From sequence record LR756511.1: a DNA stretch of 64,000 nucleotides; one strand, 5' to 3'. The translations under genes were made by a program, and so were the position numbers. This document shows positions 7,612 through 37,560 of this stretch, one piece after another (positions within the stretch are counted from its first letter, which is position 1; each line of letters opens with the position of its first letter). The notes beneath the pieces are model-generated. The model had not been told where the DNA came from. It worked only from the letters and a program-made list of their open reading frames with translations, and did not search any database.

Positions 7612-8412
7612 TTACACCAAGAAATCCTTCGTTGTCGTAACCTGCATACCGCGCTTCTTCATATCGGTTACGAAATCCTGACCCAACTTCTCGAAACCGC
7701 CAACGTCGCTGGTCGCATCTTCCAGCAGAACCAGCTTCTTAACCAACGAATCATCACTGAAATAGTTGCAAGCATCGCGGCCAGTGTTTGCAAGACAGTG
7801 CGAACGAGCTTCACCCGCGAGAAGAACCAAGTCAGCTTCGTTGATGGTATTGAGGAAACCAACATTCATCTGAGTGCCAGGATCGCTAGCATCAGGAACG
7901 TCAGCAACGATAGCGGAGTAGTGTTCCGTGAAGACGTTAGAACCCTTCGTAACGAAATCGACGGTAGCGAAGTCGCCACACCACTCCATTAAAGCCTCAT
8001 AAAGCGGTGGGAAGACGGTTTGGCCCATAGACCCAATCAGACAGTGGGGTGGCCAAATACACAAGGGATAACGAGCATTCGTCTCAAGCTTTTCGACATA
8101 TTCCTTGGCACGCTTGAACGTGCTAGGCATACGGGTAGTCCAGGTGCCGTCCCGAACGTCCTTGGCAGTAATAATCGTGAAAGGCTTGGGAGGATTGCCA
8201 GCCGAATCTTTCCAGAAAATCGGATGGGCAATATGAACTAAATGGTGGGAGTCGAGAGTAACGTGAATGTCGTCAATCTTGTCTTTAAGTCGCTTGAGCA
8301 TGGTTGCTAAACGCTGCATATCCTTATCGGCGCCGCCCACATATAGGGCACCTTTCGGATCGCAGAAATCGACCTGCGGATCAATCACCACCAGATGAAT
8401 CTTCTTAGCCAT
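7612..8412 (-). CDS. pncA: Nicotinamidase (cysteine hydrolase/isochorismatase family)
   Basis: IDPQVDF, TLDSH..H, WPPHC, VTKG and ARSHC (D-K-C triad plus metal ligands). Confidence 0.85.
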   Translation of the reverse strand: MAKKIHLVVIDPQVDFCDPKGALYVGGADKDMQRLATMLKRLKDKIDDIHVTLDSHHLVHIAHPIFWKDSAGNPPKPFTIITAKDVRDGTWTTRMPSTFKRAKEYVEKLETNARYPLCIWPPHCLIGSMGQTVFPPLYEALMEWCGDFATVDFVTKGSNVFTEHYSAIVADVPDASDPGTQMNVGFLNTINEADLVLLAGEARSHCLANTGRDACNYFSDDSLVKKLVLLEDATSDVGGFEKLGQDFVTDMKKRGMQVTTTKDFLV

Positions 8413-8579
8413 TTTTCTTTCCTTTCTTCTTTCTCTTTATCTTGCTCTTTGGTTTACGATTCTCAAGCCACGCACACAGAGGCTTTAAATCACCATGAGA
8501 AGCCCCGTAGAGAGCCGTGCCTATAAACGCTTGCAAGTCCGTAACTGGCTGTTTCATCTACCTACACCTTACCACAAAT

Positions 8580-8879
8580 TTACCATTTGGAAAGCGGCAT
8601 AATCAAGTTCTGGTATTTCCTTGCATCAAAAGCATCAATAAACTTCGATACTGGTTTTGGCATTTCGATTTGCACTTTCCCTACATTGGAATACAGCCTA
8701 GTCATGGTAATCTTACAGCGGGTTTTCATTTTCTTCCGCACGTAACGCGCCACAGGGCATTGCTTAGCGTGACACCAGATACCCTTAATCTTTTCTTTCT
8801 CCAAGGTCTTTGCAACTTCCGTTCTTGTCGCCCCTAAAGACCCAAGAACCTTCCTTACATTAGCCTCAGTAATTTTCAC
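8580..8879 (-). CDS. Hypothetical phage protein
   Basis: CPVARY motif seen in phage small proteins. Confidence 0.55.
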   Translation of the reverse strand: MKITEANVRKVLGSLGATRTEVAKTLEKEKIKGIWCHAKQCPVARYVRKKMKTRCKITMTRLYSNVGKVQIEMPKPVSKFIDAFDARKYQNLIMPLSKW

Positions 8880-9057
8880 TTTACCGTCCTATAGAAATAA
8901 GGGCACTCATTACCCAATCTTGCCTTCAATTCATCCGCTTCCGCAATCAACTTCTTTGCTTCCTCACCATCATGCGGCTCACGGCGATATCTTACCTCCT
9001 CACGACCATTAGGCCAAACGTATACTATTTCAAGAGTCATTGCAATATCATCTTCGA

Positions 9058-9390
9058 TTATTCTACTACCACCTTCAACTTAACGTCGGCAACCTTACTG
9101 ACTTCGAACGCAAGGAAATTGTCCTTTGTATCATCGTCTTCCATAAGGAACTTGATGAGAGTAATCCACTGTTCCTTATAACTGGTGATATAATGCTTAA
9201 AGGTATCGTAATGCTCTGTATGAGCAGGATAACCATGTCCAGGGGCCGTACGGCTACGCTCATCCCCTTCAATGTAGACACTTTCCTTCTCATAAACAAT
9301 AACCGCGTAATGGGAACTGCGGAGAATGTCTTGGGGGTTCCTTACACGGATAATATCTTTTAAATCCCTAAGCTTATATAAATAACTCAT
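9058..9390 (-). CDS. Hypothetical protein
   Basis: GGAGG ribosome-binding site, packed. Confidence 0.6.
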   Translation of the reverse strand: MSYLYKLRDLKDIIRVRNPQDILRSSHYAVIVYEKESVYIEGDERSRTAPGHGYPAHTEHYDTFKHYITSYKEQWITLIKFLMEDDDTKDNFLAFEVSKVADVKLKVVVE

Positions 9391-9399
9391 ATAGCCTCC

Positions 9400-9633
9400 T
9401 TACAGGTATAACAGCCAGCATTCGCCTTCTTGTTCTCTCACCCAACCTTCTTCAATAAGAATCTTTTCATCATTCTCATGAAGCAATAAAGGTAGTTCAT
9501 CGACTAGGATATAAAGAAGTGACGGATTTTTAGGCGCGCTTGAGAATTCAAAGCACGCGGGAACATAATCTACAGTTACCCTAGCTTCATCAGGAAAATA
9601 TCTAAGTTGCTGCCGTAGCTCCTTCACCGTCAT
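9400..9633 (-). CDS. Hypothetical phage protein
   Basis: MTVKELRQQL..P.EA.V N-terminus typical of phage small proteins. Confidence 0.6.
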   Translation of the reverse strand: MTVKELRQQLRYFPDEARVTVDYVPACFEFSSAPKNPSLLYILVDELPLLLHENDEKILIEEGWVREQEGECWLLYL

Positions 9634-10135
9634 TTGGCACCTCTACCTTTCCTTGAAATGGTCTAATTGGATATAAAGGACAATTTGTAATGTTGCACAG
9701 CTTCACTTCTTTGCTATCCCAATTAGAGCATTCCAGACATTTTAGCTTTATACAAGCCTTAGCACTACCCTTCTGAGCCTTCTGGACAATGGGCAGAAAT
9801 CGCTTTGGCGTTTCCAGCTTTAATCGCTTAAAGGTTTCCGCGAACGCTTTCATCTTTGCGCTACGCGGGGTGCGATTGCGAGGGACACCGCCACCACCAA
9901 GACCGCCAGGATTGCCACGCTTCCCAGGCTGGGTTTTGTAAACAATTCCTAGCTCTTTAGCTCGCTGGTATGCAACCGCCGCCGTTAGGGGACGGGGTTG
10001 CATATTCTTTCCCCAATCGCTTTGCTCTACCGCTTTCCATAAAGCAGATGGATTCTCAAACGTCTGTGCAGCTTCAAGGTCAGTAACGACTTTTTGAAAT
10101 TCACCTTTGTTAATTTCTAGTTTAGTCCTAGCCAT
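9602..10135 (-). CDS. Basic protein with C-terminal Cys4 Zn-binding motif
   Basis: KCLECS...EVKLC...CPLYP. Confidence 0.65.
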   Translation of the reverse strand: MARTKLEINKGEFQKVVTDLEAAQTFENPSALWKAVEQSDWGKNMQPRPLTAAVAYQRAKELGIVYKTQPGKRGNPGGLGGGGVPRNRTPRSAKMKAFAETFKRLKLETPKRFLPIVQKAQKGSAKACIKLKCLECSNWDSKEVKLCNITNCPLYPIRPFQGKVEVPNDGEGATAAT

Positions 10136-10136
10136 T

Positions 10137-10322
10137 TCATTCCTTGGTTAAGTCCTTATGACATTTGCAACACAGCTTAATCTCGCTTAGAACAATTACG
10201 GCACGAAAGATACGGCTGAACTTGATGGTATCGGGCGGCAGCGTATTAAAGCATTCACGACAATATTTATCATCGTTATACTTAAACCCGACAACATCAA
10301 GTCCAGCCGCACCTAGATTCAT
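10137..10322 (-). CDS. Small Cys-rich protein
   Basis: YCREC...CCKCH. Confidence 0.5.
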   Translation of the reverse strand: MNLGAAGLDVVGFKYNDDKYCRECFNTLPPDTIKFSRIFRAVIVLSEIKLCCKCHKDLTKE

Positions 10323-10729
10323 GATCGCAACGTTTTAATGGCGTCCTTCCAAACGTTTGTAAGTGCCTTGTAATGATCCTTCACAAGCTTCTCGGACGAG
10401 TCAATCTTCATAAACTTGTCAAGAACCTTACAAGTGAAGGACAGACCATAGGGCGCACCCGCGTCTAGCGGCCCATTATAAGGATCAGAAGTGGGATGCC
10501 TAATGCCAAGCCCCTCTGTTGCCGTCCAAAAATTCCCATAAAGCTGCCCAAGGATGCACGCCTTATCTCCATTTCCTTCGTGCGCCTTTTCTTCATAAAG
10601 ATCAAGCTTGTTCAACTTGATCTTTTTATACCAGCCAGGGCACTTCTTGTTCAGAAGCTTGACGCCCTTCTGGACACGGCTTTCCATCTGTTCCTGCGTT
10701 ACAATCAGCTTTGTCTTAAGAGCAACCAT
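10319..10729 (-). CDS. Hypothetical phage protein
   Basis: Abuts the rIIA stop; CILGQLYG motif. Confidence 0.6.
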   Translation of the reverse strand: MVALKTKLIVTQEQMESRVQKGVKLLNKKCPGWYKKIKLNKLDLYEEKAHEGNGDKACILGQLYGNFWTATEGLGIRHPTSDPYNGPLDAGAPYGLSFTCKVLDKFMKIDSSEKLVKDHYKALTNVWKDAIKTLRS

Positions 10730-12864: not shown

Positions 12865-12912
12865 AAGACTTTCTCCTAATTTCAGGTTTGACGTTATTGC
12901 CTATCGCTATAA

Positions 12913-12924
12913 GTACAGCTGCAA
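12913..12924 (-). promoter_or_regulatory. Repeated near-palindromic motif upstream of rIIA
   Basis: GTACAGCTGCAA on + strand; recurs upstream of several genes. Confidence 0.55.
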
Positions 12925-13164
12925 CTCAATTCGCCCACGCTCTTATTATAAGCAAAAGAATCTTTAGTGCGACTACTGTTAAAAAGAACACAACAAAACC
13001 ACGCAAATACCAGGGACGGTTAGGCTCCATTCTCAACCTCTGTTATAGCCTTCCATAGAAAGTGGTATGGCGCTTCGTCATAACTTTGAGAATCACGCCA
13101 TTCTTTTTCTTGTTCGCAAGTAAGGCAATGCATCGCCTTCTTAGAAGCTTCAAGTAATTGAAGA

Positions 13165-13204
13165 ATAACGGGACTAGCCGTTATTTCGCGGCTAGTCCCG
13201 TTAT
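13165..13204 (-). terminator. Perfect 16-bp inverted repeat just after rIIB
   Basis: ATAACGGGACTAGCCG-8nt-CGGCTAGTCCCGTTAT. Confidence 0.75.
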
Positions 13205-13209
13205 CTTTC

Positions 13210-14254: not shown

Positions 14255-14281
14255 ATCGTTGCGACTGACACAACTGACGTT

Positions 14282-17799: not shown

Positions 17800-19482
17800 T
17801 TAGTATTGTTGCCCCGCCATATCATCCCCGCTATGTCTGAGTAACCCAAGATCAACTCTTGACATCTTAGGAAGCGGCATGGGCGTCGGTGGCGATAACA
17901 AGGAAGGAAGTAACCTGTTAAGCAATTCCTTCGCCAAGTGAACGTGTTCCGTAGCGATAGAAACTTGCTCTCTACGGCGTTCCAGAAGGCTAGCGTGAAG
18001 CTTCATAGCCTCTGCCGCTTCTAACAAATCCTCTTCCCGAACCTGTCCCTCAATATTGCCGCCATTAAGACGAGCAATAGCCGCAATCTTAGCACGTTCT
18101 GTTACTTCCCGAATAAAGGCGGGAATACGACCTGCAAGCTTTTCACCAATGTTCGTGAAGTTGGTGGACTGAGCGAACAGATTCCTACCGTACAGCTTCA
18201 CTAGCCGAATCGCTGCTTCTGTATCAGGCGGCTTAATTTCAACTAATGTGTCCAGTCTACCCATGCGGAGAAGTGCTGGATTAATGCTCTCGATATTGTT
18301 AGAGGTAAAGACAACCATAACTTCCTTGCCTTTAGTGTCGCAACCATCCATAATATTCAATATTTCATCCATGCTCAGAGAACGTTCACCCTCTAAAGCA
18401 CGGTCAATATCTTCAGCAAAGATAATTGCTGGAGCATATTGAGTTGCAAGCTGTAAACCGCGAGCAAGGTCCAGAACGCTTTCCAGATAAATAAAGGTAA
18501 AGCCGTGACGGATTCCCTTTAAAGCTGTAACCGTTGCTGTTAAAGTCTTACCACAGCCATAAGGACCGTGTAATAGGATACCGCGTTTGAGTGGGACGCC
18601 ATATTTACGGCAGGCCGCAGCGTATTCAATCGGAGTAAACAGACCGATCTTGAGAGCAGTTGCAACGTCATTGCCGAAAACAAGATCGGTTTCAGCAACG
18701 CCTTCAAGGGAGATAAACTTGGGGCAATGATCCATTGGAGCATACTTCTGCCCTTTACGTTCCCAAGCAAATCCAACCTTAATCGCCTGACCGCGATAAA
18801 TGGATCGGTCACGCAACAATTCTTCGGTCTTCTTTGCGATAGCGGCAATCTTATCTTTATATCTGTTCTTAATCTTGCCACTAATAGCAAACTTTGGTGT
18901 AGGAGCGGAGATTAATTCGGTTTCAAGGTGCCCGTCGATGCCAGGGACAATGATACGGCCCCACGGAACCTGAACGGTTTCCGTAACACTAATAGGCACG
19001 CCAACAAGGACGGGTGACCTTGGAGCGGTCATCATACTGCCAGGAACCGTAACCATATCCGACCAACCATGAATCTCTGTCAAAGCACGATGAAAGGCAA
19101 CCGCACCATCCAAAGGGGAGCAAGCAAAATCATAATGAATCGCAACTTCGCGGTCATCTTCTTCACGTTTACGCTTGAGCCATTCAATACCTTCGTCATG
19201 GCTCATGCCGCTCGGAAGAATGATTTGATTGCCATTACGAATCACTTCTACATCTTTACAAGTCATCGTCACTTTAGGTTCCTCTTTCGGTATTTCAATC
19301 TTTGGAAGGTCTTTTTTAGTTAATTCAGCGGTAGGCATCTGAATCATTCTAACATCATAAGAGTTTTTAGTAGAACGACCAAACGACTGAACGGTGAATT
19401 GCTGCTGATATTTTCTTTTTTCTTCGTAATAACCCCATAATGCTAACAGATCAGCCAAAAACTGTTCATCAGCTTTAGCCAT
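17800..19482 (-). CDS. AAA+ ATPase (single classical AAA module)
   Basis: Walker A GPYGCGKT, Walker B IIFAEDID, SRH PALLRMGRLD. Confidence 0.85.
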   Translation of the reverse strand: MAKADEQFLADLLALWGYYEEKRKYQQQFTVQSFGRSTKNSYDVRMIQMPTAELTKKDLPKIEIPKEEPKVTMTCKDVEVIRNGNQIILPSGMSHDEGIEWLKRKREEDDREVAIHYDFACSPLDGAVAFHRALTEIHGWSDMVTVPGSMMTAPRSPVLVGVPISVTETVQVPWGRIIVPGIDGHLETELISAPTPKFAISGKIKNRYKDKIAAIAKKTEELLRDRSIYRGQAIKVGFAWERKGQKYAPMDHCPKFISLEGVAETDLVFGNDVATALKIGLFTPIEYAAACRKYGVPLKRGILLHGPYGCGKTLTATVTALKGIRHGFTFIYLESVLDLARGLQLATQYAPAIIFAEDIDRALEGERSLSMDEILNIMDGCDTKGKEVMVVFTSNNIESINPALLRMGRLDTLVEIKPPDTEAAIRLVKLYGRNLFAQSTNFTNIGEKLAGRIPAFIREVTERAKIAAIARLNGGNIEGQVREEDLLEAAEAMKLHASLLERRREQVSIATEHVHLAKELLNRLLPSLLSPPTPMPLPKMSRVDLGLLRHSGDDMAGQQY

Positions 19483-25484: not shown

Positions 25485-26402
25485 TCAAGCCGCATTTTCA
25501 TCAAGTTGGTTGAACCTTTCTTCGGACAGTGAACTATATGCAAGAAGATGATCTACCGCCTTGCACGCCGACGCTGCAATTCGAAAAATCAAAGTTGGAT
25601 CATCTTGCATATAATCAACCCAATCGAGTCGGTATTGATTAAAATTGCGGAAGGCAACACTGTGCGGACATCCCAATTCTTCAACCATAAATGCCGCGCC
25701 AATTTCAGCCCTTAATTCCTTAATAGGATCGACCGTATCAGTGTCAAATCCCAATCGCGGCTCAGTCCAATGGATTAATTCATGGGCCAAACTTTCATAG
25801 TACCCAGGCAATCCGCCCAATCCAGCCTCAAATTCCTTTTTTGTTGGGAGGGTAATTGTGTCTGATCCATAGAAATAAGCGCATCTTCCGACGTTATTCT
25901 CCTGAATACAAGCGTGACTGGCGTGTAATACTTTTTCAGCCTTATTATAATCTGGCTTCATGATAGGATTAGGTAATAGTGATTCATCCGCCACCTTCAC
26001 CTGTTCAAGATTATAAACAACAGCAGGAATCAAATGCACGCTATTGGTTAAAACGTCAAGCTTATAAAATACGGTTTCCGTTCCCCACTCGCCCGCTGGA
26101 ACATTATCAGGACGGTCCTTTACAACCATTCCTAACGCTGTAAATTGTTCGACTGTTCCCCAAAGGTTACTTGAGTAACCACATCGTCTTGCGGCCATTT
26201 GAAGCAGAATGGCATTAACGCCAAAGAACTTCTTCTTGGTGAATACGTGGCGAGGAAACCCAACGCCATTGCCGCGACCAACCCAAGGCTTTTGCCAAGG
26301 CACTTCCTTAGACTGCAAAGCCTTAATGACTTGGTTGTTTATGTTACGACGTAAAAGATTACTCATCTCCTGCTTGCTTGGGGAATGTGTCGTTAAACTC
26401 AT
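25485..26402 (-). CDS. ardC: ArdC-like antirestriction protein (ssDNA-binding domain plus zincin domain)
   Basis: PWQKPW, F.GVNAILL, WGT..Q, VYNLEQ, YYESLAHELIHWT, ELRAEIGA. Confidence 0.85.
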   Translation of the reverse strand: MSLTTHSPSKQEMSNLLRRNINNQVIKALQSKEVPWQKPWVGRGNGVGFPRHVFTKKKFFGVNAILLQMAARRCGYSSNLWGTVEQFTALGMVVKDRPDNVPAGEWGTETVFYKLDVLTNSVHLIPAVVYNLEQVKVADESLLPNPIMKPDYNKAEKVLHASHACIQENNVGRCAYFYGSDTITLPTKKEFEAGLGGLPGYYESLAHELIHWTEPRLGFDTDTVDPIKELRAEIGAAFMVEELGCPHSVAFRNFNQYRLDWVDYMQDDPTLIFRIAASACKAVDHLLAYSSLSEERFNQLDENAA

Positions 26403-26765: not shown

Positions 26766-27875
26766 TTATGCTGCCAAATCCAATTCGTCCATACTAAGAT
26801 GCTTGATGCTACGCTTGTCTAGCTCAGCAACCCCAGCCTTAGTGATACAATACCCACGATTATCAACGGAAACCATTGGTTCCTGATCGTCCGTAGCCGC
26901 CAGCAGCCACGGCATGATAAACTTATCCAATTCTTCGTGCTTAACGCCAGCGACAACTGGCAAATTCTTTGCACTAATCGGACCCTGCCCAAGTGCCTTG
27001 AGAATTGCGAGCCGCTTGTAGGACATTCCAAACGGATCAATTTCATTATCGCTCGCAACCTTGTGGGCGACATCCTTCCAGCTTTGGCAAGGATTCATGT
27101 TATATTCCAGTCGCATTTCACGCGCAAAAGCCAACGCTTCACGCGGAACGCGATTGCAGAAATGAGCGACGAGACGGCATGTAGCCAAATCCCAATCATC
27201 ATTCTGAACCTGGATAATCTTTGCTACTTCTTCCTTTGTATAAAGATTAAGAACACACTTGGTAAAACGAGTATCAAATGCATCAAACAGCTTGCCCCGT
27301 TCGGTAGTGGCAATCATCCAATGCACATTCTTACAATTGATACGAACGTTTCTTTCCGTAACAAGCATAGCATCATTGTGTTCTGTCGCCTTAAGCAAAC
27401 CTTGCACGATTGGCCCAGGCAAAGCATGGACTTCATCAATGAAAATATTGATTGGCGGGAAAAGGAAGTCATAACTGCCCTCCAATTCCACCAACGGAAC
27501 CGATGGATTCCACCGCGAGCAAACCCTAGCAACTTCTAAGAAAATATCATGAACTGTCTTCACCGATTTTGGTGAAATTTCGATTAAGGGCAATTGATTT
27601 GCTGCGGCATGACGGCGCGCAAGATCGGTCTTACCGCAGCCCGCTTGTCCGATGAAGGCGATAGAAAGGTCATTACAAACATGGTTGTAACGACCTTGTG
27701 CCTCAAAATCAATGCGGATAAGCTTGTCTACGGCACGGCGATTGCCGATGAAGCCGAAGTAAGGCGAGATCGGATTGGATGGGTCTAGAAAACGACGACG
27801 CTCATCCGCGTCGGGCGCTTCCTTTATGCGGGAATGGCTTGAGCCAAAGAAAATAATCTCACGTTGACCGCCCAT
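26766..27875 (-). CDS. ruvB: RuvB-like Holliday-junction branch migration ATPase
   Basis: FIG near N-terminus, GQAGCGKT, FIDEVH, IATT..GKL..AF..RF, C-terminal winged helix with RG...T..G. Confidence 0.75.
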   Translation of the reverse strand: MGGQREIIFFGSSHSRIKEAPDADERRRFLDPSNPISPYFGFIGNRRAVDKLIRIDFEAQGRYNHVCNDLSIAFIGQAGCGKTDLARRHAAANQLPLIEISPKSVKTVHDIFLEVARVCSRWNPSVPLVELEGSYDFLFPPINIFIDEVHALPGPIVQGLLKATEHNDAMLVTERNVRINCKNVHWMIATTERGKLFDAFDTRFTKCVLNLYTKEEVAKIIQVQNDDWDLATCRLVAHFCNRVPREALAFAREMRLEYNMNPCQSWKDVAHKVASDNEIDPFGMSYKRLAILKALGQGPISAKNLPVVAGVKHEELDKFIMPWLLAATDDQEPMVSVDNRGYCITKAGVAELDKRSIKHLSMDELDLAA

Positions 27876-28573: not shown

Positions 28574-29575
28574 TTACTTCTCGCCTTGTCCCTCCCATTC
28601 GTCAAAAAATTTATCAACGGAGGGATTTTCTTTGTGAACCTTTGGCGGATTGACGTAGGCTTCCTTCACCTTTTTCTTTGCTCGCTCAAGAACATACTGG
28701 ATGTTCTGGCGGGTATAGCGATCACCTGTTCGTTCATTAACGTGAGTCTTCGCAACGTCTTCCTTCCATCCATGATAAGGGAAGAGTTCCGTCAACAGAC
28801 ACGCCAATTCCAATTCATCCAAATCCGCGTCCTTCACGGCTTGCCGTGCATCCTTGCGGATATAAAAGACTTCCTTGAAATCGCGGTCTACACCAGAACG
28901 GCTACCAGTGTAGTCATCTTCATGAGTCTCTTCGTCCGTGTCGCTGGCAAGAGCCTCATTAATAACCTTCGTGGTAGAGCGGAAGAAGATCGTGCGCTCT
29001 TCCTCCGTAAGCCCAATCGCTTCAACCACTTCGTCATCTGAAATGTTTCCGTCATGCTTTTCGCGTTCCTCTTCCACGCGACGAATGATATCAAGAGCTT
29101 CATTCGTTAGTGGACAAAGAGGATTAAGGCGATTGATGCACGCGACGATCTTGCGGCGCACACAACGCCAAACGTAGGTGAGAAGAGTGGTTCCCTTTTC
29201 CGTTTCGTATGAATACGTAGCGTCAAGGATACCCATTTCACCTTCCTGCATGAATTCCTCATACGCTTCATGCGGATCGAAATTATTCGCAGCCGCAGCC
29301 CGCGCCTGTCGCACGATCATCCGATAGAATGCCGCGCGCATCTTGGTTTCGCACTTGTCACGGACTTCCATAATGAGCGGAATTGCCGCGTCAAGGGTTT
29401 GCTTTTGCTCAGGAGTGAGCTTGGAGGTGTCCAGGGTTCCCTTGAAGAGTTGTCCCCGAAACATGGTGTGTTTAAGACCCATCATTTCCGCGCACCGCTT
29501 AAGAGCGGAATTGCCAGCGGTCATGATTTGGCACAACTCTTCTGCTTCTCCCTTCGTCAAACGAATTGGTCGCAT
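28574..29575 (-). CDS. Sigma70-family RNA polymerase sigma factor
   Basis: Region 2-like EEFMQEGEMGILDATYSYETEKGTTLLTYVWRCVRRKI; region 4-like TRQNIQYVLERAKKKVK. Confidence 0.75.
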   Translation of the reverse strand: MRPIRLTKGEAEELCQIMTAGNSALKRCAEMMGLKHTMFRGQLFKGTLDTSKLTPEQKQTLDAAIPLIMEVRDKCETKMRAAFYRMIVRQARAAAANNFDPHEAYEEFMQEGEMGILDATYSYETEKGTTLLTYVWRCVRRKIVACINRLNPLCPLTNEALDIIRRVEEEREKHDGNISDDEVVEAIGLTEEERTIFFRSTTKVINEALASDTDEETHEDDYTGSRSGVDRDFKEVFYIRKDARQAVKDADLDELELACLLTELFPYHGWKEDVAKTHVNERTGDRYTRQNIQYVLERAKKKVKEAYVNPPKVHKENPSVDKFFDEWEGQGEK

Positions 29576-31264: not shown

Positions 31265-31293
31265 TTTGCCTTCTTTTTTGAATACTATAATAT

Positions 31294-32079
31294 ATGAATT
31301 ACTTCTCGGTTTGTGTCGTTTGTGATGATAAAGAAATTAAATGGATCACAGAATTTATTGATTATCACTTAGTTGTAGGGGCCACACACGTCTTTGTTGT
31401 TTATGCCGAACGTAATCCGCTTCAAGGAAACACATTACTTAAACCCTATGTGGATAAGGGTTTGGTAACTATAATTCACGTTCCTTCGAATCACGCATGG
31501 GATAGATGGGCAGAGGGATTAACGATAGCCAAAGACAAGGCTATTGAGTTGGGATATCGCTGGCTTGCCATCATTGACATAGATGAGTTTATTTTACCCA
31601 TGCAAACAGACAGCGTGCCAGAATTTCTAAAGGATTATGAGGATTATAGCGGGGTTTGTATCAATTGGTTTATTTATGGAACGTCTGGTTACATAGAATC
31701 ACCACCATCTGTGTTAAAACACTTAGTTCACCGCGCCGAAGATAATTGGCGTGTAAATGGGCATGTTAAATCTATACTTAATCCAAAAATGATTAAGGTT
31801 CTTCATGCACACACTTCCAGTTTGACTAGTGGCTTCATTGTGAATGAAGACAAAGAACAGATTAGCTCGTTTCTCACAACGATAAAAGCCTCTAAAATAC
31901 GGTTAAATCATTACGTTATTAGGTCGAGAAAGGAATTTGAAGAGATTGATAGCAAAATGACAAATTACAAAGATGAGATATTTTATGATGATAATAACAG
32001 AAATGAAGTTTTTGACGACGAGATTTATAGGAGATTTGGACAGAGGGTAGAAGAGTTTCACAAATCAATTCACAGCTAA
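31294..32079 (+). CDS. Glycosyltransferase, GT2/GT92-like (paralog of 955-1731)
   Basis: WITEFIDYH, IDIDEF, HVKSI, LNHYVIRS. Confidence 0.8.
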   Translation: MNYFSVCVVCDDKEIKWITEFIDYHLVVGATHVFVVYAERNPLQGNTLLKPYVDKGLVTIIHVPSNHAWDRWAEGLTIAKDKAIELGYRWLAIIDIDEFILPMQTDSVPEFLKDYEDYSGVCINWFIYGTSGYIESPPSVLKHLVHRAEDNWRVNGHVKSILNPKMIKVLHAHTSSLTSGFIVNEDKEQISSFLTTIKASKIRLNHYVIRSRKEFEEIDSKMTNYKDEIFYDDNNRNEVFDDEIYRRFGQRVEEFHKSIHS

Positions 32080-32790
32080 ACGGTTCTTAGTCAATTGGCG
32101 TTCATCCCACCGCGACCCCTGAATGAAATCAGACCGAACCCACTTAAAACGATGGGCAATCTTCTCATCATCACAAACCTTAATGTAAATCCCCTCACGC
32201 CTGTCTAAAGTGGAATAAGGACTTTTTTCGCCCATAAACTTTTCAAGAAATTCGAAATTTGGCACTTCGCCCTTGTGAAGCAAAGGCACCAATTCAAAAC
32301 CCGCCTGTCCTAATAACTCCCTAGCTTTACCAGTAGGTATAAAGATGCCCCTTTCCCAATCATAAATGTCATAGGGAATAAAGTAAGTGGGGAGATGATT
32401 GTACTCAATGCCGTGGAGAGCATAAAGCCACTCGCCATATACCGCAGCATCAAATCCACAAAGATCATTAAGCATCACAAACTTTGGACGAATTTCATAG
32501 ATGTGATTCCAGATCGGCGCAAACTGAAGTTTCGCTGGCGTTCGCAAATGACCTGACTTCCCCTTCTGGAGAATGTTATTACGATTACGAACAATGGGAT
32601 TGTCATTATAAAAACAAATGCCTACCGAAGCTCCGTCAATCTTCTCTTCACAAAACGTGTTCTCATTGCTGAAAATGACATCACATTCTTTTTCAGAGGC
32701 AATAAGATCAAGGCGTTGCGCATTTGGCTTATAACACAAATGCTTTGTGCGAGGATATTCAGGAAGTATTTGTTGCGGGTTCACAAGCAC
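32065..32790 (-). CDS. RNA ligase family (Rnl2-like) protein
   Basis: YPRTKHL, EEKIDG, YGEW, YDIYD, REGIYIK, FKWVRSDF. Confidence 0.88.
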   Translation of the reverse strand: MLVNPQQILPEYPRTKHLCYKPNAQRLDLIASEKECDVIFSNENTFCEEKIDGASVGICFYNDNPIVRNRNNILQKGKSGHLRTPAKLQFAPIWNHIYEIRPKFVMLNDLCGFDAAVYGEWLYALHGIEYNHLPTYFIPYDIYDWERGIFIPTGKARELLGQAGFELVPLLHKGEVPNFEFLEKFMGEKSPYSTLDRREGIYIKVCDDEKIAHRFKWVRSDFIQGSRWDERQLTKNRLAVN

Positions 32791-33179
32791 GCTCCCAACA
32801 ATCCAGTAATCATGAACAAAGTAAAAAGGATGGTTAGAAAACCATAACCAAACCGAAGAAAATCACTCGTTATAAACCGTTCCACATCCAATACCAGTTG
32901 TAGGCACAGACGCACGCCCCAAAAAACGGCTAAATAGCCGCACACAAAGCGAGAAAGCATACTGCCGTCAGCTAATGCCGTCGAATTACATATACATACC
33001 AACCCGTTAAAGATAATAGCCAGAACGACATAGCCGCCATAAACCCAATAAAGCTGCTTGTGCAGCCGTGGCAAATGCTTAAATACAGTTTTCCATTCAA
33101 GTTTGAAAGGCAATGAGAAGGACACCAACAACACACTTAATTGTAACCACCCAACGATAAAGATTAAATTAGCAAGCAT
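32781..33179 (-). CDS. Membrane protein coupled to the MBOAT gene
   Basis: About four TM segments; starts 1 nt after the MBOAT stop. Confidence 0.7.
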   Translation of the reverse strand: MLANLIFIVGWLQLSVLLVSFSLPFKLEWKTVFKHLPRLHKQLYWVYGGYVVLAIIFNGLVCICNSTALADGSMLSRFVCGYLAVFWGVRLCLQLVLDVERFITSDFLRFGYGFLTILFTLFMITGLLGACL

Positions 33180-33180
33180 A

Positions 33181-33879
33181 CTACCTCACAAATAAATTTC
33201 TAAAACCTTCATGTAGAAGAAGCGGCAGCGGAAGAATAACTACTAACATCGTGAATATTCTTCCGCGTACTATTGGTAATTTCCACTCCGTTAAAAGCCC
33301 AACAAATTGAATCATAAAGTATAAGAACGGTTGTCCATAACCTGAACCCACAGGCAAAGTCATAACAATTTCATGCAGAATACCACTTAGGGCGAAGACG
33401 GCAAACGTTGCCAAAGTGATTGATTTTCTTACCAGCCGTTTAAAAACAAGTATTTGAGCTAGATCGCGGAAAGCGGTATTCCAACGATTGCCCCAAAAAT
33501 CTCCTAAACTGACCGCAAGAATCGGGAAGTTCATTAAAGGTTTAGCATGGAACCCCGCCATTCTCCATGCCAAACTAAGCAAATGAAACACCCCAAAATG
33601 CAATATGAGAACAATTCCAACAATGGTCGCAATAGGGATGTTTAATAGTATCAAATACGTGCCAATGGCGATATTGAGGAAGCTATAGCCCCACTCTGAA
33701 ATATGAATTGGTTTAGCTTTAGAGTTTAAGAACCCTCTAGGGTCCATGCCTACCCAAAGGAAGAAGTAGGCAAGCTCCATTTTGGTTGACTTAACTGGAA
33801 TGAGTGAAGCAAACTTACAACAGAGATAAACAGCTACCGCTACTGTCCACATTAGTTCCATTATTTCAACACTTCCCAA
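33181..33879 (-). CDS. Membrane-bound O-acyltransferase (MBOAT_2-like)
   Basis: P.LA.SLGDFWG.RWN.AF, F.LSG.LHE. Confidence 0.85.
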   Translation of the reverse strand: MGSVEIMELMWTVAVAVYLCCKFASLIPVKSTKMELAYFFLWVGMDPRGFLNSKAKPIHISEWGYSFLNIAIGTYLILLNIPIATIVGIVLILHFGVFHLLSLAWRMAGFHAKPLMNFPILAVSLGDFWGNRWNTAFRDLAQILVFKRLVRKSITLATFAVFALSGILHEIVMTLPVGSGYGQPFLYFMIQFVGLLTEWKLPIVRGRIFTMLVVILPLPLLLHEGFRNLFVR

Positions 33880-34208
33880 CCATTTCCTAAGTCGTATGAC
33901 CCTTCAATATCCGCAGACTCAATAGCCGTAGATAATGGTGGCGCACAACCGAGACAGTTATCCCCAAGCGGAACGCTCAAATTTTTCACGCCTAGCTTTT
34001 GAAACTCAGCAACTTCCTCGTCAATGATCTTACGATACTTCGGGGCTAATTTTAAGCAGACAGGCACATTTTCTTTATCTTCAGCAAAATAACGGCACCA
34101 TTCATTCGGTTTGCCCTTCTTGCAAACCCCTTCAATCATTGTGCTTCCGATCACATGAAGCGGAATCAGACCCACGGTTGCAACACCGAGGAAGCTACGA
34201 CGATCCAT
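33861..34208 (-). CDS. Hypothetical protein with Tat-like N-terminus and Cys motif
   Basis: MDRRSFL; C..G.....CRY.....C. Confidence 0.55.
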   Translation of the reverse strand: MDRRSFLGVATVGLIPLHVIGSTMIEGVCKKGKPNEWCRYFAEDKENVPVCLKLAPKYRKIIDEEVAEFQKLGVKNLSVPLGDNCLGCAPPLSTAIESADIEGSYDLGNGWEVLK

Positions 34209-34218
34209 TGTACAACTC

Positions 34219-34641
34219 CTAGCCAGCGAAAAGCTTGGTAATGGTTGCCATCAGATTGTTTTCTGATACTCTCTTCGACGCCCCAGGATGGTACAGGATA
34301 TAGTAGCCGCTTTGTCCTCTCTTGTGTAACTCAGCAGGAACGATCCAACCAGAGTGGTGTGGTCCCCTCACAATTACACAATCTTCACCTAATGGTGCAT
34401 CTCCTAACGTAAACTTGAGAGGCTCGCCATTAGAGCAGAGCATATCACAAAAACAATCTTGCAGTTTAATAAGCAAATCGGGCGCGAGCCTTTTCCTTCT
34501 TTCTCTCTCAGCCTCTTCTCTCTCAGCCTTTCGCCTATTAATCTCAACCTGTTCTTCCCAAGTTGGCGTTCTAAACCAACTGAATATATTCCAATACCAC
34601 TTACGCTTCGGTTGCTTATGTGTCCAAATTACGTCGTCCAT
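34219..34641 (-). CDS. Hypothetical protein
   Basis: Start reassigned to ATG 34641, 1 nt after the upstream stop. Confidence 0.6.
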   Translation of the reverse strand: MDDVIWTHKQPKRKWYWNIFSWFRTPTWEEQVEINRRKAEREEAERERRKRLAPDLLIKLQDCFCDMLCSNGEPLKFTLGDAPLGEDCVIVRGPHHSGWIVPAELHKRGQSGYYILYHPGASKRVSENNLMATITKLFAG

Positions 34642-34642
34642 C

Positions 34643-35248
34643 TTAATCTCCCCCGCCACCACAACCGCCACCGCCGCAAGAACTTCCACAACTACTACCA
34701 CCGCAACTGTGACCGCCACAAGAATGCCCACCACCGTCAGAGTGACCACCGCAACTGTGGCCATCTGAGTGTGAGCAATCGTGTGAGTGCGAATGTGAAT
34801 CACAACCGCCAGCACAAAACACTGGAACAAATGCAGTTCCGCCACTACACCCAGGTTCTACCGAAGATGTTGATTTCGCTTTTGCCTTTTCCCCAAAGGC
34901 TTCTTTATACATTTCCTTCGTTTTATTGAACGCTTTTACTTGTGACAGACTGCCGATAGGTAAATGTGGGTTGTGATGGAACATCTTTCCGAAAAGCGTT
35001 TGGCAATCTTTCTCATATTTTGCTGTATCCAAAATATGCTCATGCCAGAAGTCGTCTAATACTTGCGTCCACGGCACAACCACTTCCTCTGGATTCATCA
35101 CAGCCAAATAGAGGAATTGACGATACTCTTTTTCTATATTGTCAACATTGTGCCAAAGTCTCCACCACCAACCTTTTTTATCGCTAAGCTTTACCTTCAC
35201 AGAATTTAGGTCGATACTTTGGACTAATGCCCATTTATCTTGATCCAT
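34643..35248 (-). CDS. Glycine-rich-domain (GRDP-like) protein with Cys/Gly/His/Ser tail
   Basis: EY..FL.L.......VVP...LDDFWH.HILDT..Y...C...FG....H.P followed by a low-complexity tail. Confidence 0.8.
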   Translation of the reverse strand: MDQDKWALVQSIDLNSVKVKLSDKKGWWWRLWHNVDNIEKEYRQFLYLAVMNPEEVVVPWTQVLDDFWHEHILDTAKYEKDCQTLFGKMFHHNPHLPIGSLSQVKAFNKTKEMYKEAFGEKAKAKSTSSVEPGCSGGTAFVPVFCAGGCDSHSHSHDCSHSDGHSCGGHSDGGGHSCGGHSCGGSSCGSSCGGGGCGGGGD

Positions 35249-35257
35249 AATTACTCC

Positions 35258-35611
35258 TTATGTTTCAGGAGTTGTTATTCTATCAAGCCAACGCAAATAT
35301 TTGAAGTGCTTTTTCGCTTCCTCTGGATCGCCTCTAAGGTCAAACCTACAAAGGGATTGTGATGGTTTGATGGTGCGACAAACTTCTGGTTGTTTGTTTT
35401 GCTGTCCCCAAACCTTACACATATTGTCGGGGCCGAGATGAATACAGCGTTCCCCAGCAGGTTTTTTGAAACGTTCCCCTGTTGGAAGCATGGAATTGAT
35501 GCTTACGCCAGTGCAGCAGCGTCCACACATATCACAATCGTATTTCTTCCCATTATCGTCAATGATTTCCAACGATTGTCGCATTTCCAGCCATTGATTG
35601 AACGTCTTCAT
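35258..35611 (-). CDS. YkgJ-family cysteine-cluster protein
   Basis: CDMCGRCC...KPAGERCIHL....C.V....PEVC; start MKTFNQWLE at 35611. Confidence 0.8.
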   Translation of the reverse strand: MKTFNQWLEMRQSLEIIDDNGKKYDCDMCGRCCTGVSINSMLPTGERFKKPAGERCIHLGPDNMCKVWGQQNKQPEVCRTIKPSQSLCRFDLRGDPEEAKKHFKYLRWLDRITTPET

Positions 35612-35773
35612 GCCGATATGTAGGGACTCTAGGATCGAAAAATTCAACTTCTCTCACAGTCCCATTCGGGTAATACCTAATCTTTTTCACTTTAGGGCAT
35701 GGCCCACCATGAAAAATTGATTGATAATCGTTCGAACACCACCGACAACGATTTGGGTCGAAATTTAGTAACA

Positions 35774-35986
35774 TTACTTTTTCCTTTTCACAGGATAAAC
35801 TTGCCTTCCGTTGATTTCGATAATGTATTTAGAGGATAATATCTCTACACCGAGAATCGTTCCATTTTCAGCGAAATCAATAATTACTTCACCCTTTTCA
35901 TCCACATCTATTGAACGCGCATAGATTGTATTTTCATCTAGTTTAGCAAACCGAATATAAGCAGGTTTCATACTTTTGCTGGGCAT
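35774..35986 (-). CDS. DUF2283-like protein
   Basis: AYIRF...IIDFAENGTILGVEIL. Confidence 0.65.
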   Translation of the reverse strand: MPSKSMKPAYIRFAKLDENTIYARSIDVDEKGEVIIDFAENGTILGVEILSSKYIIEINGRQVYPVKRKK

Positions 35987-37131
35987 AGGCCAAGTTCCTC
36001 TTTAATCTGCTTAACCTTCACAGGATCACCAGTATGCTTGCCTTCATCATCGGAAAGCTTCACAACTGGTCTAAGACCATCACCGAATCCAAAGTCTGCT
36101 CCCGTAAGCTTAATAACCATATTAAGCGGTTTGTGTCCGCAATCGTTTGTGAGGAAGGTTCCAATCCCCATCACACAAGGAATTTCTTCTCCAAACTCCT
36201 TCTGTAAAGCAATCGCCTTATCGTCATTAAGACTATCACTGAAAACAATTTTCTTTGTCTTGGGATCAATACCCAAATCCCTATAATGCTGGAGCATCTT
36301 GCGTCCAAACTCAGCGGGATCGCCGCTATCCTGTCTCACACCGCTAAAAGCATCCGCCATTTCTTTGTCAAAATCTCGCAAGAATATATCGGTAGTAAGT
36401 GTGTCTGTAAGAGCAATACGCGCAGACGGCTTATATTCCTCCATCCAATACCCCATCCATGCCCGATTCGAAAGTGTCGCGCCGTGCAAAGCCTGCATAG
36501 CCATCACAGATTCATGAGCATATGTGCCAGAGACAGGAACCTTATACTTCATTGCAAAGTAAGGGTTACTAGTCCCTTTAAATCCGTCATACAGTCTCAT
36601 GTAAGCAACAACCGCATCTTGTGCCGCTTTAGAAAAGCGGCGGCGCGTGCCGAAGTCAATCCAATTAACGCCCTTACAATTCATATTAGCGGCTTTATCA
36701 ACAATACGCCTCTGCCAATCATTAGCTGGCTCCGCATTAGTCATTCGGAAATATAATTCGCTGATAATTGCCATCAGCGGCACTTCCCACAAAATTGTGT
36801 TTTTCCATTTGCCACGCACAGAGACATTTAGTTTACTTTCATGTTGAGTTATTATAACATCAGCAGGTTTAAATTTAAACTCATTAAGCCAATTCACATA
36901 ATCCGATTTGAAAACCGATTGATCTCTTAGCCACTGGTTCTCCTCATTGCTCAAGCTAAGATGAGACATACTATCAACTTCAACCCTTAAGCGGTCAGCA
37001 AATCCAACAGGGAAATTATCAATCCCCCTGTTAATAAATTGATATGTGGCAATAGCTTCTGGAAATTTATGAAATACCACTTGTTGTTGGGTAAGTTTAT
37101 AGAAATCTGTATCTAATATGGACATAATCAT
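35968..37131 (-). CDS. pncB: Nicotinate phosphoribosyltransferase
   Basis: SILDTDFYKLT, LWEVPLMAIISE, DFGTRRRFS, GTSN, GT.AHE, LTDT, G.RQDSGDP, FSDSL, GIGT.LTND, KLSD..GK. Confidence 0.92.
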   Translation of the reverse strand: MIMSILDTDFYKLTQQQVVFHKFPEAIATYQFINRGIDNFPVGFADRLRVEVDSMSHLSLSNEENQWLRDQSVFKSDYVNWLNEFKFKPADVIITQHESKLNVSVRGKWKNTILWEVPLMAIISELYFRMTNAEPANDWQRRIVDKAANMNCKGVNWIDFGTRRRFSKAAQDAVVAYMRLYDGFKGTSNPYFAMKYKVPVSGTYAHESVMAMQALHGATLSNRAWMGYWMEEYKPSARIALTDTLTTDIFLRDFDKEMADAFSGVRQDSGDPAEFGRKMLQHYRDLGIDPKTKKIVFSDSLNDDKAIALQKEFGEEIPCVMGIGTFLTNDCGHKPLNMVIKLTGADFGFGDGLRPVVKLSDDEGKHTGDPVKVKQIKEELGLCPAKV

Positions 37132-37560
37132 TTGATTACCCTTTTGATGTGGGCAAATTCCATATGCAAATTTGGCCCAATTACAGTTGTGACAAAGAAT
37201 TTGATACCCTTCTGGATAATTATTTTTTGCAAGCCATCTGTAGAATCCGCTTTTGCCTTTTTCGTCGCGGTCTTGCCTGCCATTACCATTAACATGATCT
37301 ATGGCTAAAAACTCGATATGGTCTTCTCCACAACAAATACACTTTCCACCATATGATAATATAACATTTTCTCTGGTTTTACGATATCGTTTTGCAACTT
37401 CACAATTTATTTTATCGGCACAGTCATCGCAATTACGTTTCTCATTATTCGTTGGTTTGCCACAACGAGGGCATAATCCATTTTTAACACGATCATCCCT
37501 TTGTTTTTTCTGCCAAATTCTATTAGCTTCATTTCTTCTGTCTTTGTCTTTATAGGGCAT
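37132..37560 (-). mobile_element. HNH homing-endonuclease-like domain fused in frame to the NAPRTase
   Basis: YGGKCICCGE...FL.IDHVNG.G...YQILCHNCN.AK..YG.CPH; no stop before the pncB ATG. Confidence 0.8.

What the first reader, a model, noticed from the sequence alone, without database searches (positions are those of the whole stretch)
7612..37560. Nicotinamidase plus NAPRTase: a deamidating NAD+ salvage route
pncA (7612-8412) and pncB (35968-37131) convert nicotinamide to nicotinate mononucleotide (Preiss-Handler entry). The described phage anti-NADase pathways NARP1 (Adps+Namat) and NARP2 (Nampt+Nmnat) use different chemistry. This pair could be a further route to counter NAD-depleting defences (Thoeris, SIR2) or to fuel the phage PARP. 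NadD and NadE are not in this window.
Basis: partly seen in the sequence, partly recalled or inferred. Interest (0 to 1): 0.65.

Follow-up and report, generated by a model that had tools for sequence, protein, structure and literature searches.

The report
Phage nicotinamide-to-NAD salvage genes
A 595-kb uncultured phage carries every enzyme needed to rebuild NAD+ from nicotinamide through nicotinic acid, a route already noted by computer analysis in other giant phages, and its nicotinamidase gene also heads an undescribed four-gene cassette.

Summary
Both genes are real. pncB (35968-37131, minus) is a clear PncB-type nicotinate phosphoribosyltransferase. 'pncA' (7612-8412, minus) falls below the curated family cut-offs, but its fold, catalytic triad and metal site all match nicotinamidases.

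The window is LR756511.1 (595,163 bp), bases 124001-188000. Outside the window the same genome encodes a glutamine-dependent NadE, a divergent NadD/NMNAT-like adenylyltransferase and a PRPP synthetase. It has no Nampt and no PnuC. The deamidating route from nicotinamide to NAD+ is therefore complete on paper.

In the four closest relatives pncB lies directly upstream of pncA. Here 27.5 kb separates them, and an HNH endonuclease is fused in frame to the front of pncB.

- A complete Preiss-Handler set in jumbo phages was already reported in silico (PMC11662467).
- No data link this route to counter-defence. A phage WGR-PARP and an ADP-ribosylglycohydrolase in the window are equally plausible reasons for it.

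One result was unexpected. In 74-76 of 80 viral loci and most bacterial loci, this nicotinamidase subfamily is the first gene of a cassette: PncA-like, vWA, PP2C, Ser/Thr kinase. It is linked to that cassette more tightly than to pncB.

The parts
7612..8412 (-). PncA-like nicotinamidase, 266 aa. It belongs to a divergent, highly conserved 266-267 aa subfamily with an insertion of about 45 aa.
   Evidence: Family invariants D11/K156/C206 and D54/H56/H123 align to yeast Pnc1 D8/K122/C167 and D51/H53/H94 (residue roles from established knowledge). The AF2 model has pLDDT 91.2. The top Foldseek PDB hits are all nicotinamidases. It is below the Pfam and NCBIfam cut-offs.
35968..37131 (-). PncB, nicotinate phosphoribosyltransferase, 387 aa counted from the internal ATG at 37131.
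   Evidence: TIGR01514 scores 403.9 bits against a cut-off of 269.55. PDB 3os4 matches at E 3e-77. The GTxAHE, DFGTRRR and GIGT motifs are invariant in A2. An AAGGG Shine-Dalgarno-like site lies 7 nt before the ATG.
37132..37560 (-). HNH endonuclease domain (143 aa) in the same frame as pncB with no stop codon between them. It gives a 530-aa fusion ORF if translated from the ATG at 37560.
   Evidence: phrog_2255 HNH endonuclease at E 2e-10. The junction was read. The public gene call for this contig is the 530-aa product (P0145). The HNH is absent from all 80 related viral loci. Relatives carry a hydrophobic hairpin of about 55 aa at this position instead.
4408..5148 (-). vWA (TerY-like) protein, 246 aa. 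It is the second gene of the conserved PncA-like cassette.
   Evidence: Pfam VWA at E 7.7e-4. The MIDAS DxSxS..T..D residues are invariant in A4. VWA-type Pfam families hit at least 6 of 21 members. It sits next to PncA-like in 76 of 80 viral loci.
92..925 (-). PP2C-type phosphatase, 277 aa. It is the third gene of the cassette. The fourth gene, a 579-aa Ser/Thr-kinase-like protein, lies just outside the window at record 119935-121674.
   Evidence: PF13672 PP2C_2 scores 51.7 bits against a cut-off of 24. The kinase scores 28 bits on Pkinase and has weak PD-T4-6 hits. PP2C and the kinase are each present in 74 of 80 viral loci.
62443..64000 (-). WGR + PARP catalytic-domain protein, 529 aa (the start codon is at window 64032). 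It consumes NAD+ and releases nicotinamide.
   Evidence: PF00644 scores 70 bits and PF05406 WGR 36.8 bits. The H-Y-E residues can be read in the sequence.
57228..58220 (-). ADP-ribosylglycohydrolase, 330 aa.
   Evidence: PF03747 scores 179.8 bits. In relative L009 its homologue lies 1.3 kb upstream of pncB-pncA.

Best explanation
The phage encodes a complete deamidating salvage route from nicotinamide to NAD+:
1. The PncA-like hydrolase turns nicotinamide into nicotinate.
2. PncB joins nicotinate to PRPP to give nicotinate mononucleotide. The phage has its own PRPP synthetase.
3. A divergent NadD/NMNAT-like enzyme adenylates this to deamido-NAD.
4. A glutamine-dependent NadE amidates it to NAD+.

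What is shown: gene presence, family membership, intact catalytic motifs, predicted folds, and conserved adjacency of pncB and pncA in the closest relatives.

What is inferred: that the enzymes are active on these substrates, and that the route keeps NAD+ up in the infected cell by recycling nicotinamide. That nicotinamide could come from the phage's own NAD+ consumers (the WGR-PARP) or from host NADase defences. I take NAD+ homeostasis and nicotinamide recycling as the primary role, and escape from NAD+-depleting defence as a possible, untested consequence.
For: - pncB passes the equivalog cut-off and matches solved PncBs.
- The PncA-like protein has the nicotinamidase triad, metal site and fold.
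- NadE scores 528.8 bits on NF010588 against a cut-off of 479.
- The NadD-like protein has the GSFNPxHxGH and ISSRxxR motifs. Its family profile hits human NMNAT1 at E 3e-4. Its model (pLDDT 88.3) has only NMN/NaMN adenylyltransferases among the listed Foldseek matches.
- Prs scores 250 bits on TIGR01251 against a cut-off of 113.
- The genome has no Nampt and no PnuC, so this is its only visible nicotinamide route.
- pncB sits directly upstream of pncA in L008, L009, L010 and L020, with flanks collinear to the window.
- PncB or NadE is interleaved with the PncA-like cassette in other viral contigs.
- An NrtR regulator lies directly upstream of PncA-like in one bacterium, and two genes upstream (with PncB and a Tpt1-type NAD+ consumer alongside) in another.
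- Other huge viral genomes with this PncA-like gene also carry PncB, NadE and NadD. In a 619-kb genome all four lie within about 9 kb.
- The PARP and the ARH in the window supply a source of nicotinamide.
Against: - No enzyme was assayed and no expression data were available.
- PncA-like and NadD-like both fall below the curated family cut-offs.
- The five genes are scattered over about 260 kb in this genome rather than clustered.
- PncA-like is accompanied by PncB within 10 kb in only 23 of 80 viral and 16 of 48 bacterial loci. The vWA protein and the kinase accompany it in about 90% or more.
- pncB carries an in-frame HNH insertion of unknown effect.
- The host is unknown, so redundancy with host enzymes cannot be judged.
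Confidence: 0.6

Rival explanations
1. The PncA-like gene is first of all a component of a conserved four-gene cassette (PncA-like, vWA, PP2C, Ser/Thr kinase; TerY-P-like architecture). This cassette would be a signalling or conflict module in which the hydrolase senses or clears nicotinamide, or a related pyridine amide, next to a phosphorylation switch. On this reading the NAD salvage link through pncB is secondary and optional.
For: - In 80 viral loci the vWA gene is present in 76, nearly always as the next gene on the same strand. PP2C and the kinase are each present in 74. PncB is present in only 23.
- In 48 bacterial loci the counts are vWA 42, kinase 43, PP2C 28 and PncB 16.
- vWA-PP2C fusion proteins exist.
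- An ADP-ribosylglycohydrolase takes the PP2C position in three bacterial loci, and a PARP lies within 10 kb in three others.
- PncA-like is unusually conserved, at 60% identity or more between the window's protein and the best 120 of its 3,717 homologues, and 57-67% to bacterial copies from several phyla.
Against: - The metal site typical of nicotinamidases is intact.
- PncB and NadE are often inserted inside the cassette.
- NrtR lies directly upstream of PncA-like in one bacterium and two genes upstream in another.
- Four Armatimonadales loci have PncA-like followed by PncB with no triad.
- The vWA and PP2C proteins hit no PADLOC model, so none for TerY-P.
- This reading does not exclude the salvage role.
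Confidence: 0.25
2. One reading: the route is a dedicated counter-defence, a fourth NAD+ reconstitution pathway. It would rebuild NAD+ from the nicotinamide released by TIR, SIR2 or DSR NADases and so rescue the phage from abortive infection.
For: - The substrate is the universal product of defence NADases.
- NARP1, NARP2 and NARP3 show that phages do counter NAD+ depletion by resynthesis (bioRxiv 10.1101/2024.02.11.579819; PMC13464706).
- The full set plus Prs is phage-encoded.
- An ArdC-like anti-restriction gene lies between pncA and pncB.
Against: - No experiment exists.
- The route needs four steps, PRPP, at least two ATP and glutamine, so it is slower and costlier than NARP1-3.
- The genes are dispersed rather than forming an early anti-defence island.
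- The same genes occur in bacterial chromosomes near the NAD regulator NrtR.
- The phage's own PARP gives an alternative reason for the route.
Confidence: 0.25
3. The pair is not a working unit in this genome. pncB has been disabled or altered by the HNH endonuclease insertion, and 27.5 kb of other DNA separates the two genes, so one or both are decaying passengers.
For: - The HNH is in frame with no stop, and it replaces the N-terminal hairpin seen in relatives.
- The pair is split only in this genome among its close relatives.
Against: - Both ORFs are intact, with all catalytic motifs.
- pncB keeps a Shine-Dalgarno-like site before its own ATG.
- PncA is 79-84% identical to the proteins of close relatives.
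Confidence: 0.07

Closest known systems
Preiss-Handler pathway sets in 'NAD-jumbo phages' (PMC11662467, Microbiome 2024)
   Same: These are huge phages carrying pncB, nadD and nadE. The claim rests on annotation only, as here. Phage pncA is mentioned in that paper's discussion.
   Different: There the genes can form one cluster (Kuafu_71) and the stated start is nicotinate. Here the set is dispersed and includes a nicotinamidase step and a Prs. The nicotinamidase is a divergent subfamily tied to a vWA-PP2C-kinase cassette. LR756511.1 is not among the largest published genomes that the paper says it re-examined; I read only its main text.
NARP2 (Nampt + Nmnat; also the Vibrio phage KVP40 NadV/NatV salvage)
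   Same: It starts from nicotinamide and PRPP and ends in NAD+.
   Different: NARP2 uses two amidated steps through NMN. This genome has no Nampt and uses four steps through nicotinate, NaMN and NaAD.
NARP1 (Adps + Namat)
   Same: A Prs-family enzyme and a type II phosphoribosyltransferase are both present in the genome.
   Different: The only PF04095 gene is a PncB equivalog, not a Nampt-like Namat. The Prs lies next to FolD, about 37 kb from pncB. No ADPR-PP chemistry is implied.
NARP3 (PnuC + NadR, PMC13464706)
   Same: It is a phage-encoded route that restores NAD+.
   Different: NARP3 imports nicotinamide riboside. No PnuC was found in this genome. The three CTP_transf_like hits are two heptose-type enzymes and the NadD-like protein, so there is no NadR.
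Bacterial PncA-PncB salvage under NrtR control
   Same: The enzymes and their order of action are the same. Bacterial members of this PncA-like subfamily lie one or two genes downstream of NrtR, in one case with PncB alongside.
   Different: Here the genes are carried by a phage. PncA-like is a 266-aa subfamily that falls below the Pfam and NCBIfam cut-offs.
TerY-P triad (vWA TerY, PP2C phosphatase, Ser/Thr kinase; recalled from Anantharaman et al. 2012 and Gao et al. 2020, not re-read here)
   Same: The same three domain types sit in one co-directional cassette downstream of PncA-like.
   Different: The vWA and PP2C proteins gave no PADLOC hit. The cassette has an added nicotinamidase-like first gene. 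PP2C is sometimes replaced by an ADP-ribosylglycohydrolase.

Membership tests
Nicotinamidase PncA (isochorismatase-like hydrolases) | Isochorismatase-like fold closest to solved nicotinamidases | tested here: met
   The AF2 model has pLDDT 91.2 and pTM 0.88. The top 13 listed Foldseek PDB matches are all nicotinamidases, E 4e-14 to 4e-9, and other amidases rank lower.
Nicotinamidase PncA (isochorismatase-like hydrolases) | Asp-Lys-Cys catalytic triad | tested here: met
   D11, K156 and C206 are invariant in 26 family members. They align to Pnc1 D8, K122 and C167.
Nicotinamidase PncA (isochorismatase-like hydrolases) | Asp/His/His metal site that binds the pyridine nitrogen | tested here: met
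   D54, H56 and H123 (the WPPHC motif) are invariant. They align to Pnc1 D51, H53 and H94.
Nicotinamidase PncA (isochorismatase-like hydrolases) | Score above the curated family cut-offs | tested here: not met
   PF00857 scores 17.7 bits against 27. NF008623 scores 22.8 bits against 174.
Nicotinamidase PncA (isochorismatase-like hydrolases) | Hydrolysis of nicotinamide to nicotinate | not testable with these tools
   This needs an enzyme assay.
PncB nicotinate phosphoribosyltransferase | Equivalog score, two-domain architecture and the phospho-His motif | tested here: met
   TIGR01514 scores 403.9 bits against 269.55. NAPRTase_N and NAPRTase are both present. GTxAHE is invariant. PDB 3os4 matches at E 3e-77.
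NadD/NMNAT adenylyltransferase | HxGH and ISSTxxR motifs, and the fold | tested here: met
   The motifs are invariant in A3. The family profile hits NMNAT1 at E 3e-4. All listed Foldseek matches are NMN/NaMN adenylyltransferases.
NadD/NMNAT adenylyltransferase | Score above the TIGR00482 cut-off | tested here: not met
   It scores 37.8 bits against 112.45, and only the N-terminal motif aligns.
Glutamine-dependent NAD+ synthetase NadE | Equivalog score with CN-hydrolase and synthetase domains | tested here: met
   NF010588 scores 528.8 bits against 479. TIGR00552 scores 189 bits.
NARP1 | A Namat (Nampt-like ADPR-PP transferase) paired with Adps | tested here: not met
   The whole record has only one PF04095 gene, and it is a PncB equivalog.
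NARP2 | Nampt | tested here: not met
   There is no second NAPRTase-family gene.
NARP3 | A PnuC transporter plus NadR | tested here: not met
   PF04973 has no match in the record. None of the PF01467 hits is NadR.
'NAD-jumbo phage' as defined in PMC11662467 | A genome over 200 kb with all genes of one NAD+ salvage or Preiss-Handler pathway | tested here: met
   The genome is 595,163 bp and carries pncB, a NadD-like gene and nadE.
TerY-P triad | vWA, PP2C and Ser/Thr kinase genes in one cassette | tested here: inconclusive
   The architecture is present. The vWA and PP2C proteins gave no PADLOC hit, and the kinase hits only PD-T4-6 and mad6 weakly.

The most novel reading that the evidence does not exclude
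The 266-aa PncA-like protein defines an undescribed four-gene module: nicotinamidase-like hydrolase, MIDAS-bearing vWA protein, PP2C (or in its place an ADP-ribosylglycohydrolase), and a 570-aa Ser/Thr-kinase-like protein. Soil bacteria (Acidobacteriota, Armatimonadota, Myxococcota) and more than 100 huge-phage contigs share it. It would couple nicotinamide clearance and NAD+ resynthesis to a protein-modification switch, for instance by sensing or buffering NAD+ breakdown during phage-host conflict. In that case the pncB, nadE and PARP genes that repeatedly join the module are its metabolic arm.
Probability: 0.3. Interest if true: 0.7.

Novelty: new member of a known kind. Interest (0 to 1): 0.5.

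Why it matters
If the enzymes are active, huge phages can rebuild NAD+ from nicotinamide by the deamidating route. That would be a fourth chemistry beside NARP1, NARP2 and NARP3. It uses only nicotinamide (the base that defence NADases release), PRPP, ATP and glutamine. It would also remove nicotinamide, which inhibits PARPs and sirtuins (established knowledge, for example yeast Pnc1 and Sir2). That fits a phage that carries its own PARP.

The gene inventory is not new for jumbo phages, so the value lies elsewhere. This genome offers a complete, defined five-gene set that can be tested. The tight, unreported link between this nicotinamidase subfamily and a vWA-PP2C-kinase cassette, in both phages and bacteria, may point to regulated NAD+ turnover.

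Tried and rejected
- No whole genome is held for the window. I searched the public record LR756511.1 through a locus handle instead.
- The two stronger CTP_transf_like hits in the record (L002, L003) are HldE- or HddA-like heptose enzymes, not NAD enzymes. I rejected them as NadD candidates.
- The weak Isochorismatase hit at record 529734 (12.4 bits) was not pursued.
- No NAD-dependent DNA ligase is present, so it cannot be the NAD+ consumer. The ligase in the window is ATP-dependent.
- PADLOC gave nothing for PncA-like, the vWA protein, PP2C, PARP, ARH or PncB.
- A profile of the vWA family against PDB sequences gave no hit.
- No public sequencing run was listed for the pncB region. Neither expression nor the in-frame HNH junction could be checked against reads, and read laying was not used.
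There is therefore no evidence either way on binding.
- The large representative-protein search was not used. The word search and family scans left no protein open in a way that needed it.
- A paper search found nothing that links a nicotinamidase with vWA, PP2C and a kinase. The NARP1/2 preprint does not mention PncA, PncB or NadE.

Full report
**Identity of the window.** The pncA and pncB stretches match LR756511.1 at 100% identity. This is an unannotated 595,163-bp 'uncultured phage' genome. Window base 1 is record base 124001. No whole genome is held for the window, so I searched the rest of the phage through the record handle.

**The observation.**
- pncB (35968-37131) is unambiguous. TIGR01514 scores 403.9 bits against a cut-off of 269.55, and NF003704 scores 435.9 against 379. 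Both Pfam NAPRTase domains are present. Solved PncB structures match at E 3e-77. The GTxAHE, DFGTRRR and GIGT motifs are invariant among relatives.
- pncA (7612-8412) is weaker by sequence. Pfam Isochorismatase scores 17.7 bits against 27, and the PncA equivalog scores 22.8 bits against 174.
- Three further tests support the nicotinamidase call. An alignment of 26 family members keeps D11, K156 and C206, plus D54, H56 and H123, invariant. A profile of that alignment hits only nicotinamidases in the PDB (yeast Pnc1 at 2e-8, M. tuberculosis PncA at 4e-6, Leishmania PNC1 at 1.5e-5), and those residues align to the Pnc1 catalytic triad and metal ligands. An AlphaFold model with pLDDT 91.2 has nicotinamidases as its top 13 listed Foldseek matches, ahead of other isochorismatase-like amidases.
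- I therefore call it a nicotinamidase-like enzyme of a divergent subfamily. It is 266-267 aa long and has an insertion of about 45 residues between the first metal ligands and the WPPHC motif.

**The rest of the pathway.** Both are in the genome.
- A 559-aa glutamine-dependent NAD+ synthetase lies at record 99246-100925. NF010588 scores 528.8 bits against a cut-off of 479.
- A 190-aa protein at record 359933-360505, next to DHFR and thymidylate synthase, carries the GSFNPxHxGH and ISSRxxR motifs. It scores below the NadD equivalog cut-off. Its family profile hits human NMNAT1. Its model (pLDDT 88.3) has only NMN/NaMN adenylyltransferases among the listed Foldseek matches.
- A PRPP synthetase lies at record 197789-198769, next to FolD. 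TIGR01251 scores 250 bits against 113.
- The record has only one NAPRTase-family gene, so there is no Nampt or Namat. It has no PnuC and no NAD-dependent ligase.
- On paper the phage can therefore run nicotinamide to nicotinate to NaMN to NaAD to NAD+, with its own PRPP supply. This is its only visible nicotinamide route.

**Linkage of pncA and pncB.**
- Protein-length and contig-length coincidences in the homologue lists led me to three contigs whose PncA-like protein is 79-82% identical to the window's. In each, pncB lies directly upstream of pncA on the same strand.
- The closest IMG/VR relative (84% identity, 373 kb) has the same arrangement.
- The flanks of these contigs are collinear with the window on both sides. 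The pair is therefore ancestrally adjacent, and in this genome a 27.5-kb block (8413-35967) separates it. The block carries an ArdC-like protein, AAA ATPases, a sigma-like protein and an RNA ligase.

**The front of pncB.**
- In close relatives PncB has a hydrophobic N-terminal hairpin of about 55 aa. The Kyte-Doolittle 19-residue maxima are 1.4-2.5, above 2.1 in five of the six relatives.
- In the window that segment is replaced by a 143-aa HNH endonuclease domain (phrog_2255, E 2e-10) in the same frame, with no stop codon before pncB.
- A Shine-Dalgarno-like AAGGG lies 7 nt before the pncB ATG. PncB may therefore be made alone, as a 530-aa fusion, or both ways.
- The HNH is absent from all 80 related viral loci and has no paralogue in the window.

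**An unexpected partner set.** I fetched 80 IMG/VR loci and 80 bacterial loci that encode this PncA-like subfamily and scored their neighbours with tblastn.

| Neighbour within 10 kb | 80 viral loci | 48 bacterial loci with 4 kb or more downstream |
|---|---|---|
| 246-aa vWA protein | 76 | 42 |
| PP2C phosphatase | 74 | 28 |
| Ser/Thr-kinase-like protein (about 570 aa) | 74 | 43 |
| PncB | 23 | 16 |
| NadE | 14 | 1 |

- In the viral loci the vWA gene is nearly always the next gene on the same strand.
- The vWA protein keeps the MIDAS residues.
- vWA-PP2C fusion proteins occur.
- In three bacterial loci an ADP-ribosylglycohydrolase sits where PP2C usually is. In three Chthonomonadaceae loci a PARP 38-42% identical to the phage's lies within 10 kb.
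- PncB and NadE are often inserted inside the cassette.
- In bacteria an NrtR regulator lies directly upstream of PncA-like in one case, and two genes upstream, with PncB and a Tpt1-type RNA 2'-phosphotransferase, in another.
- In the window the cassette is present but stretched: PncA-like at 8412-7612, vWA at 5148-4408, PP2C at 925-92, and the kinase just outside at record 119935-121674.
- The vWA and PP2C proteins gave no PADLOC hit. I found no paper that links a nicotinamidase with such a triad.

**NAD+ consumers in the window.**
- A 529-aa WGR+PARP protein with the H-Y-E residues lies at window 62443-64032.
- An ADP-ribosylglycohydrolase lies at 57228-58220.
- An ATP-dependent DNA ligase lies between them at 60911-62059.
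- In relative L009 the ligase and ARH homologues lie just upstream of pncB-pncA.
- PARP turnover releases nicotinamide, which also inhibits PARPs (established knowledge). A nicotinamidase beside it makes biochemical sense without invoking host defence.

**Comparison with what is known.**
- NARP1 and NARP2 use different chemistry (bioRxiv 10.1101/2024.02.11.579819). That preprint does not mention PncA, PncB or NadE.
- NARP3, published in August 2026, is PnuC plus NadR (PMC13464706).
- PMC11662467 reported that 174 of 668 gut jumbo phages encode a complete salvage or Preiss-Handler pathway. It gives a pncB-nadD-nadE cluster as an example and mentions phage pncA in its discussion.
- Agrobacterium phage Atu_ph07 is annotated with both NAPRTase and NAD synthetase.
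- In the phage collection, PncB homologues occur in 13 records, NadE in 11, this PncA-like subfamily in 4 and this NadD-like subfamily in 2.
- Among five other near-complete huge viral genomes with the PncA-like gene, one carries clear PncB, NadE and NadD matches and two more have weaker NAPRTase-family matches alongside NadE and a NadD-type gene. In the 619-kb genome among these, all four lie within about 9 kb.
- The inventory is thus a new member of a kind already described in silico. No one has shown activity or a counter-defence effect for the deamidating route.

**Verdict.**
A complete deamidating route is encoded and differs from NARP1-3. Its purpose is open, whether counter-defence, support for the phage's own PARP, or general NAD+ supply. 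The idea is not new for jumbo phages.
- The most interesting residue is the near-constant pairing of this nicotinamidase subfamily with a vWA-PP2C-kinase cassette in both phages and bacteria. I could describe this pairing but not explain it.
- Expression, the HNH junction in reads, an Atlas look-up and a co-folding test could not be run.

Noticed in passing
window 7612-8412, 4408-5148, 92-925, and record 119935-121674 (L015:3936-5675): A conserved four-gene cassette (PncA-like, vWA with an intact MIDAS site, PP2C, and a Ser/Thr-kinase-like protein of about 570 aa) is found in 74-76 of 80 viral loci and most bacterial loci. vWA-PP2C fusions occur. An ADP-ribosylglycohydrolase sometimes replaces PP2C. 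The cassette is stretched over about 11 kb in this genome.
   Followed up: partly
window 37132-37560 (-): An HNH endonuclease domain is fused in frame to the front of pncB. It is unique to this genome among 80 related loci and has no paralogue in the window. It replaces a hydrophobic N-terminal hairpin that close relatives' PncB carries, which suggests that PncB is membrane-anchored in those phages.
   Followed up: partly
window 8413-35967: A 27.5-kb block separates the pncB-pncA pair, which is adjacent in close relatives. The block holds an ArdC-like anti-restriction/zincin protein (25485-26402), two AAA ATPases (17800-19482, 26766-27875), a sigma-70 region-2-like protein (28574-29575), an RNA ligase (32065-32790) and an MBOAT_2 protein (33181-33879).
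   Followed up: partly
window 57228-64000 (-): A possible ADP-ribosylation and DNA-repair group: an ADP-ribosylglycohydrolase (57228-58220), an ATP-dependent DNA ligase (60911-62059), and a WGR+PARP protein with H-Y-E (62443-64032, running off the window).
   Followed up: partly
window 34643-35248 (-): A 201-aa protein with a Cys/His/Gly-rich tail and no Pfam hit. Its homologue in relative L010 lies elsewhere, downstream of the cassette, which points to a local rearrangement.
   Followed up: no
window 39071-39823 and 40273-41235 (-): DUF5131 and polysaccharide pyruvyl transferase genes lie upstream of pncB. They are syntenic with relative L010.
   Followed up: no
LR756511.1 record 356655-361927 (L002, L004) and 108277-111552 (L003): An HldE-like bifunctional heptose kinase/adenylyltransferase and a GHMP-kinase-cytidylyltransferase fusion, so the phage encodes sugar-nucleotide synthesis. 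DHFR and thymidylate synthase flank the NadD-like gene.
   Followed up: no
L016 and L017 (related viral contigs): In these relatives a Peptidase_M24-like gene sits between PncB and NadE inside the cassette. Thg1-like, RNA ligase and UDG genes lie just upstream, so NAD salvage is embedded in an RNA/DNA-repair neighbourhood.
   Followed up: no
LR756501.1 / LR756503.1 record 428860-431429: The 735-kb phage has a PncB homologue directly next to an NAD synthetase-domain gene. PMC11662467 credits that phage with nadD only.
   Followed up: no
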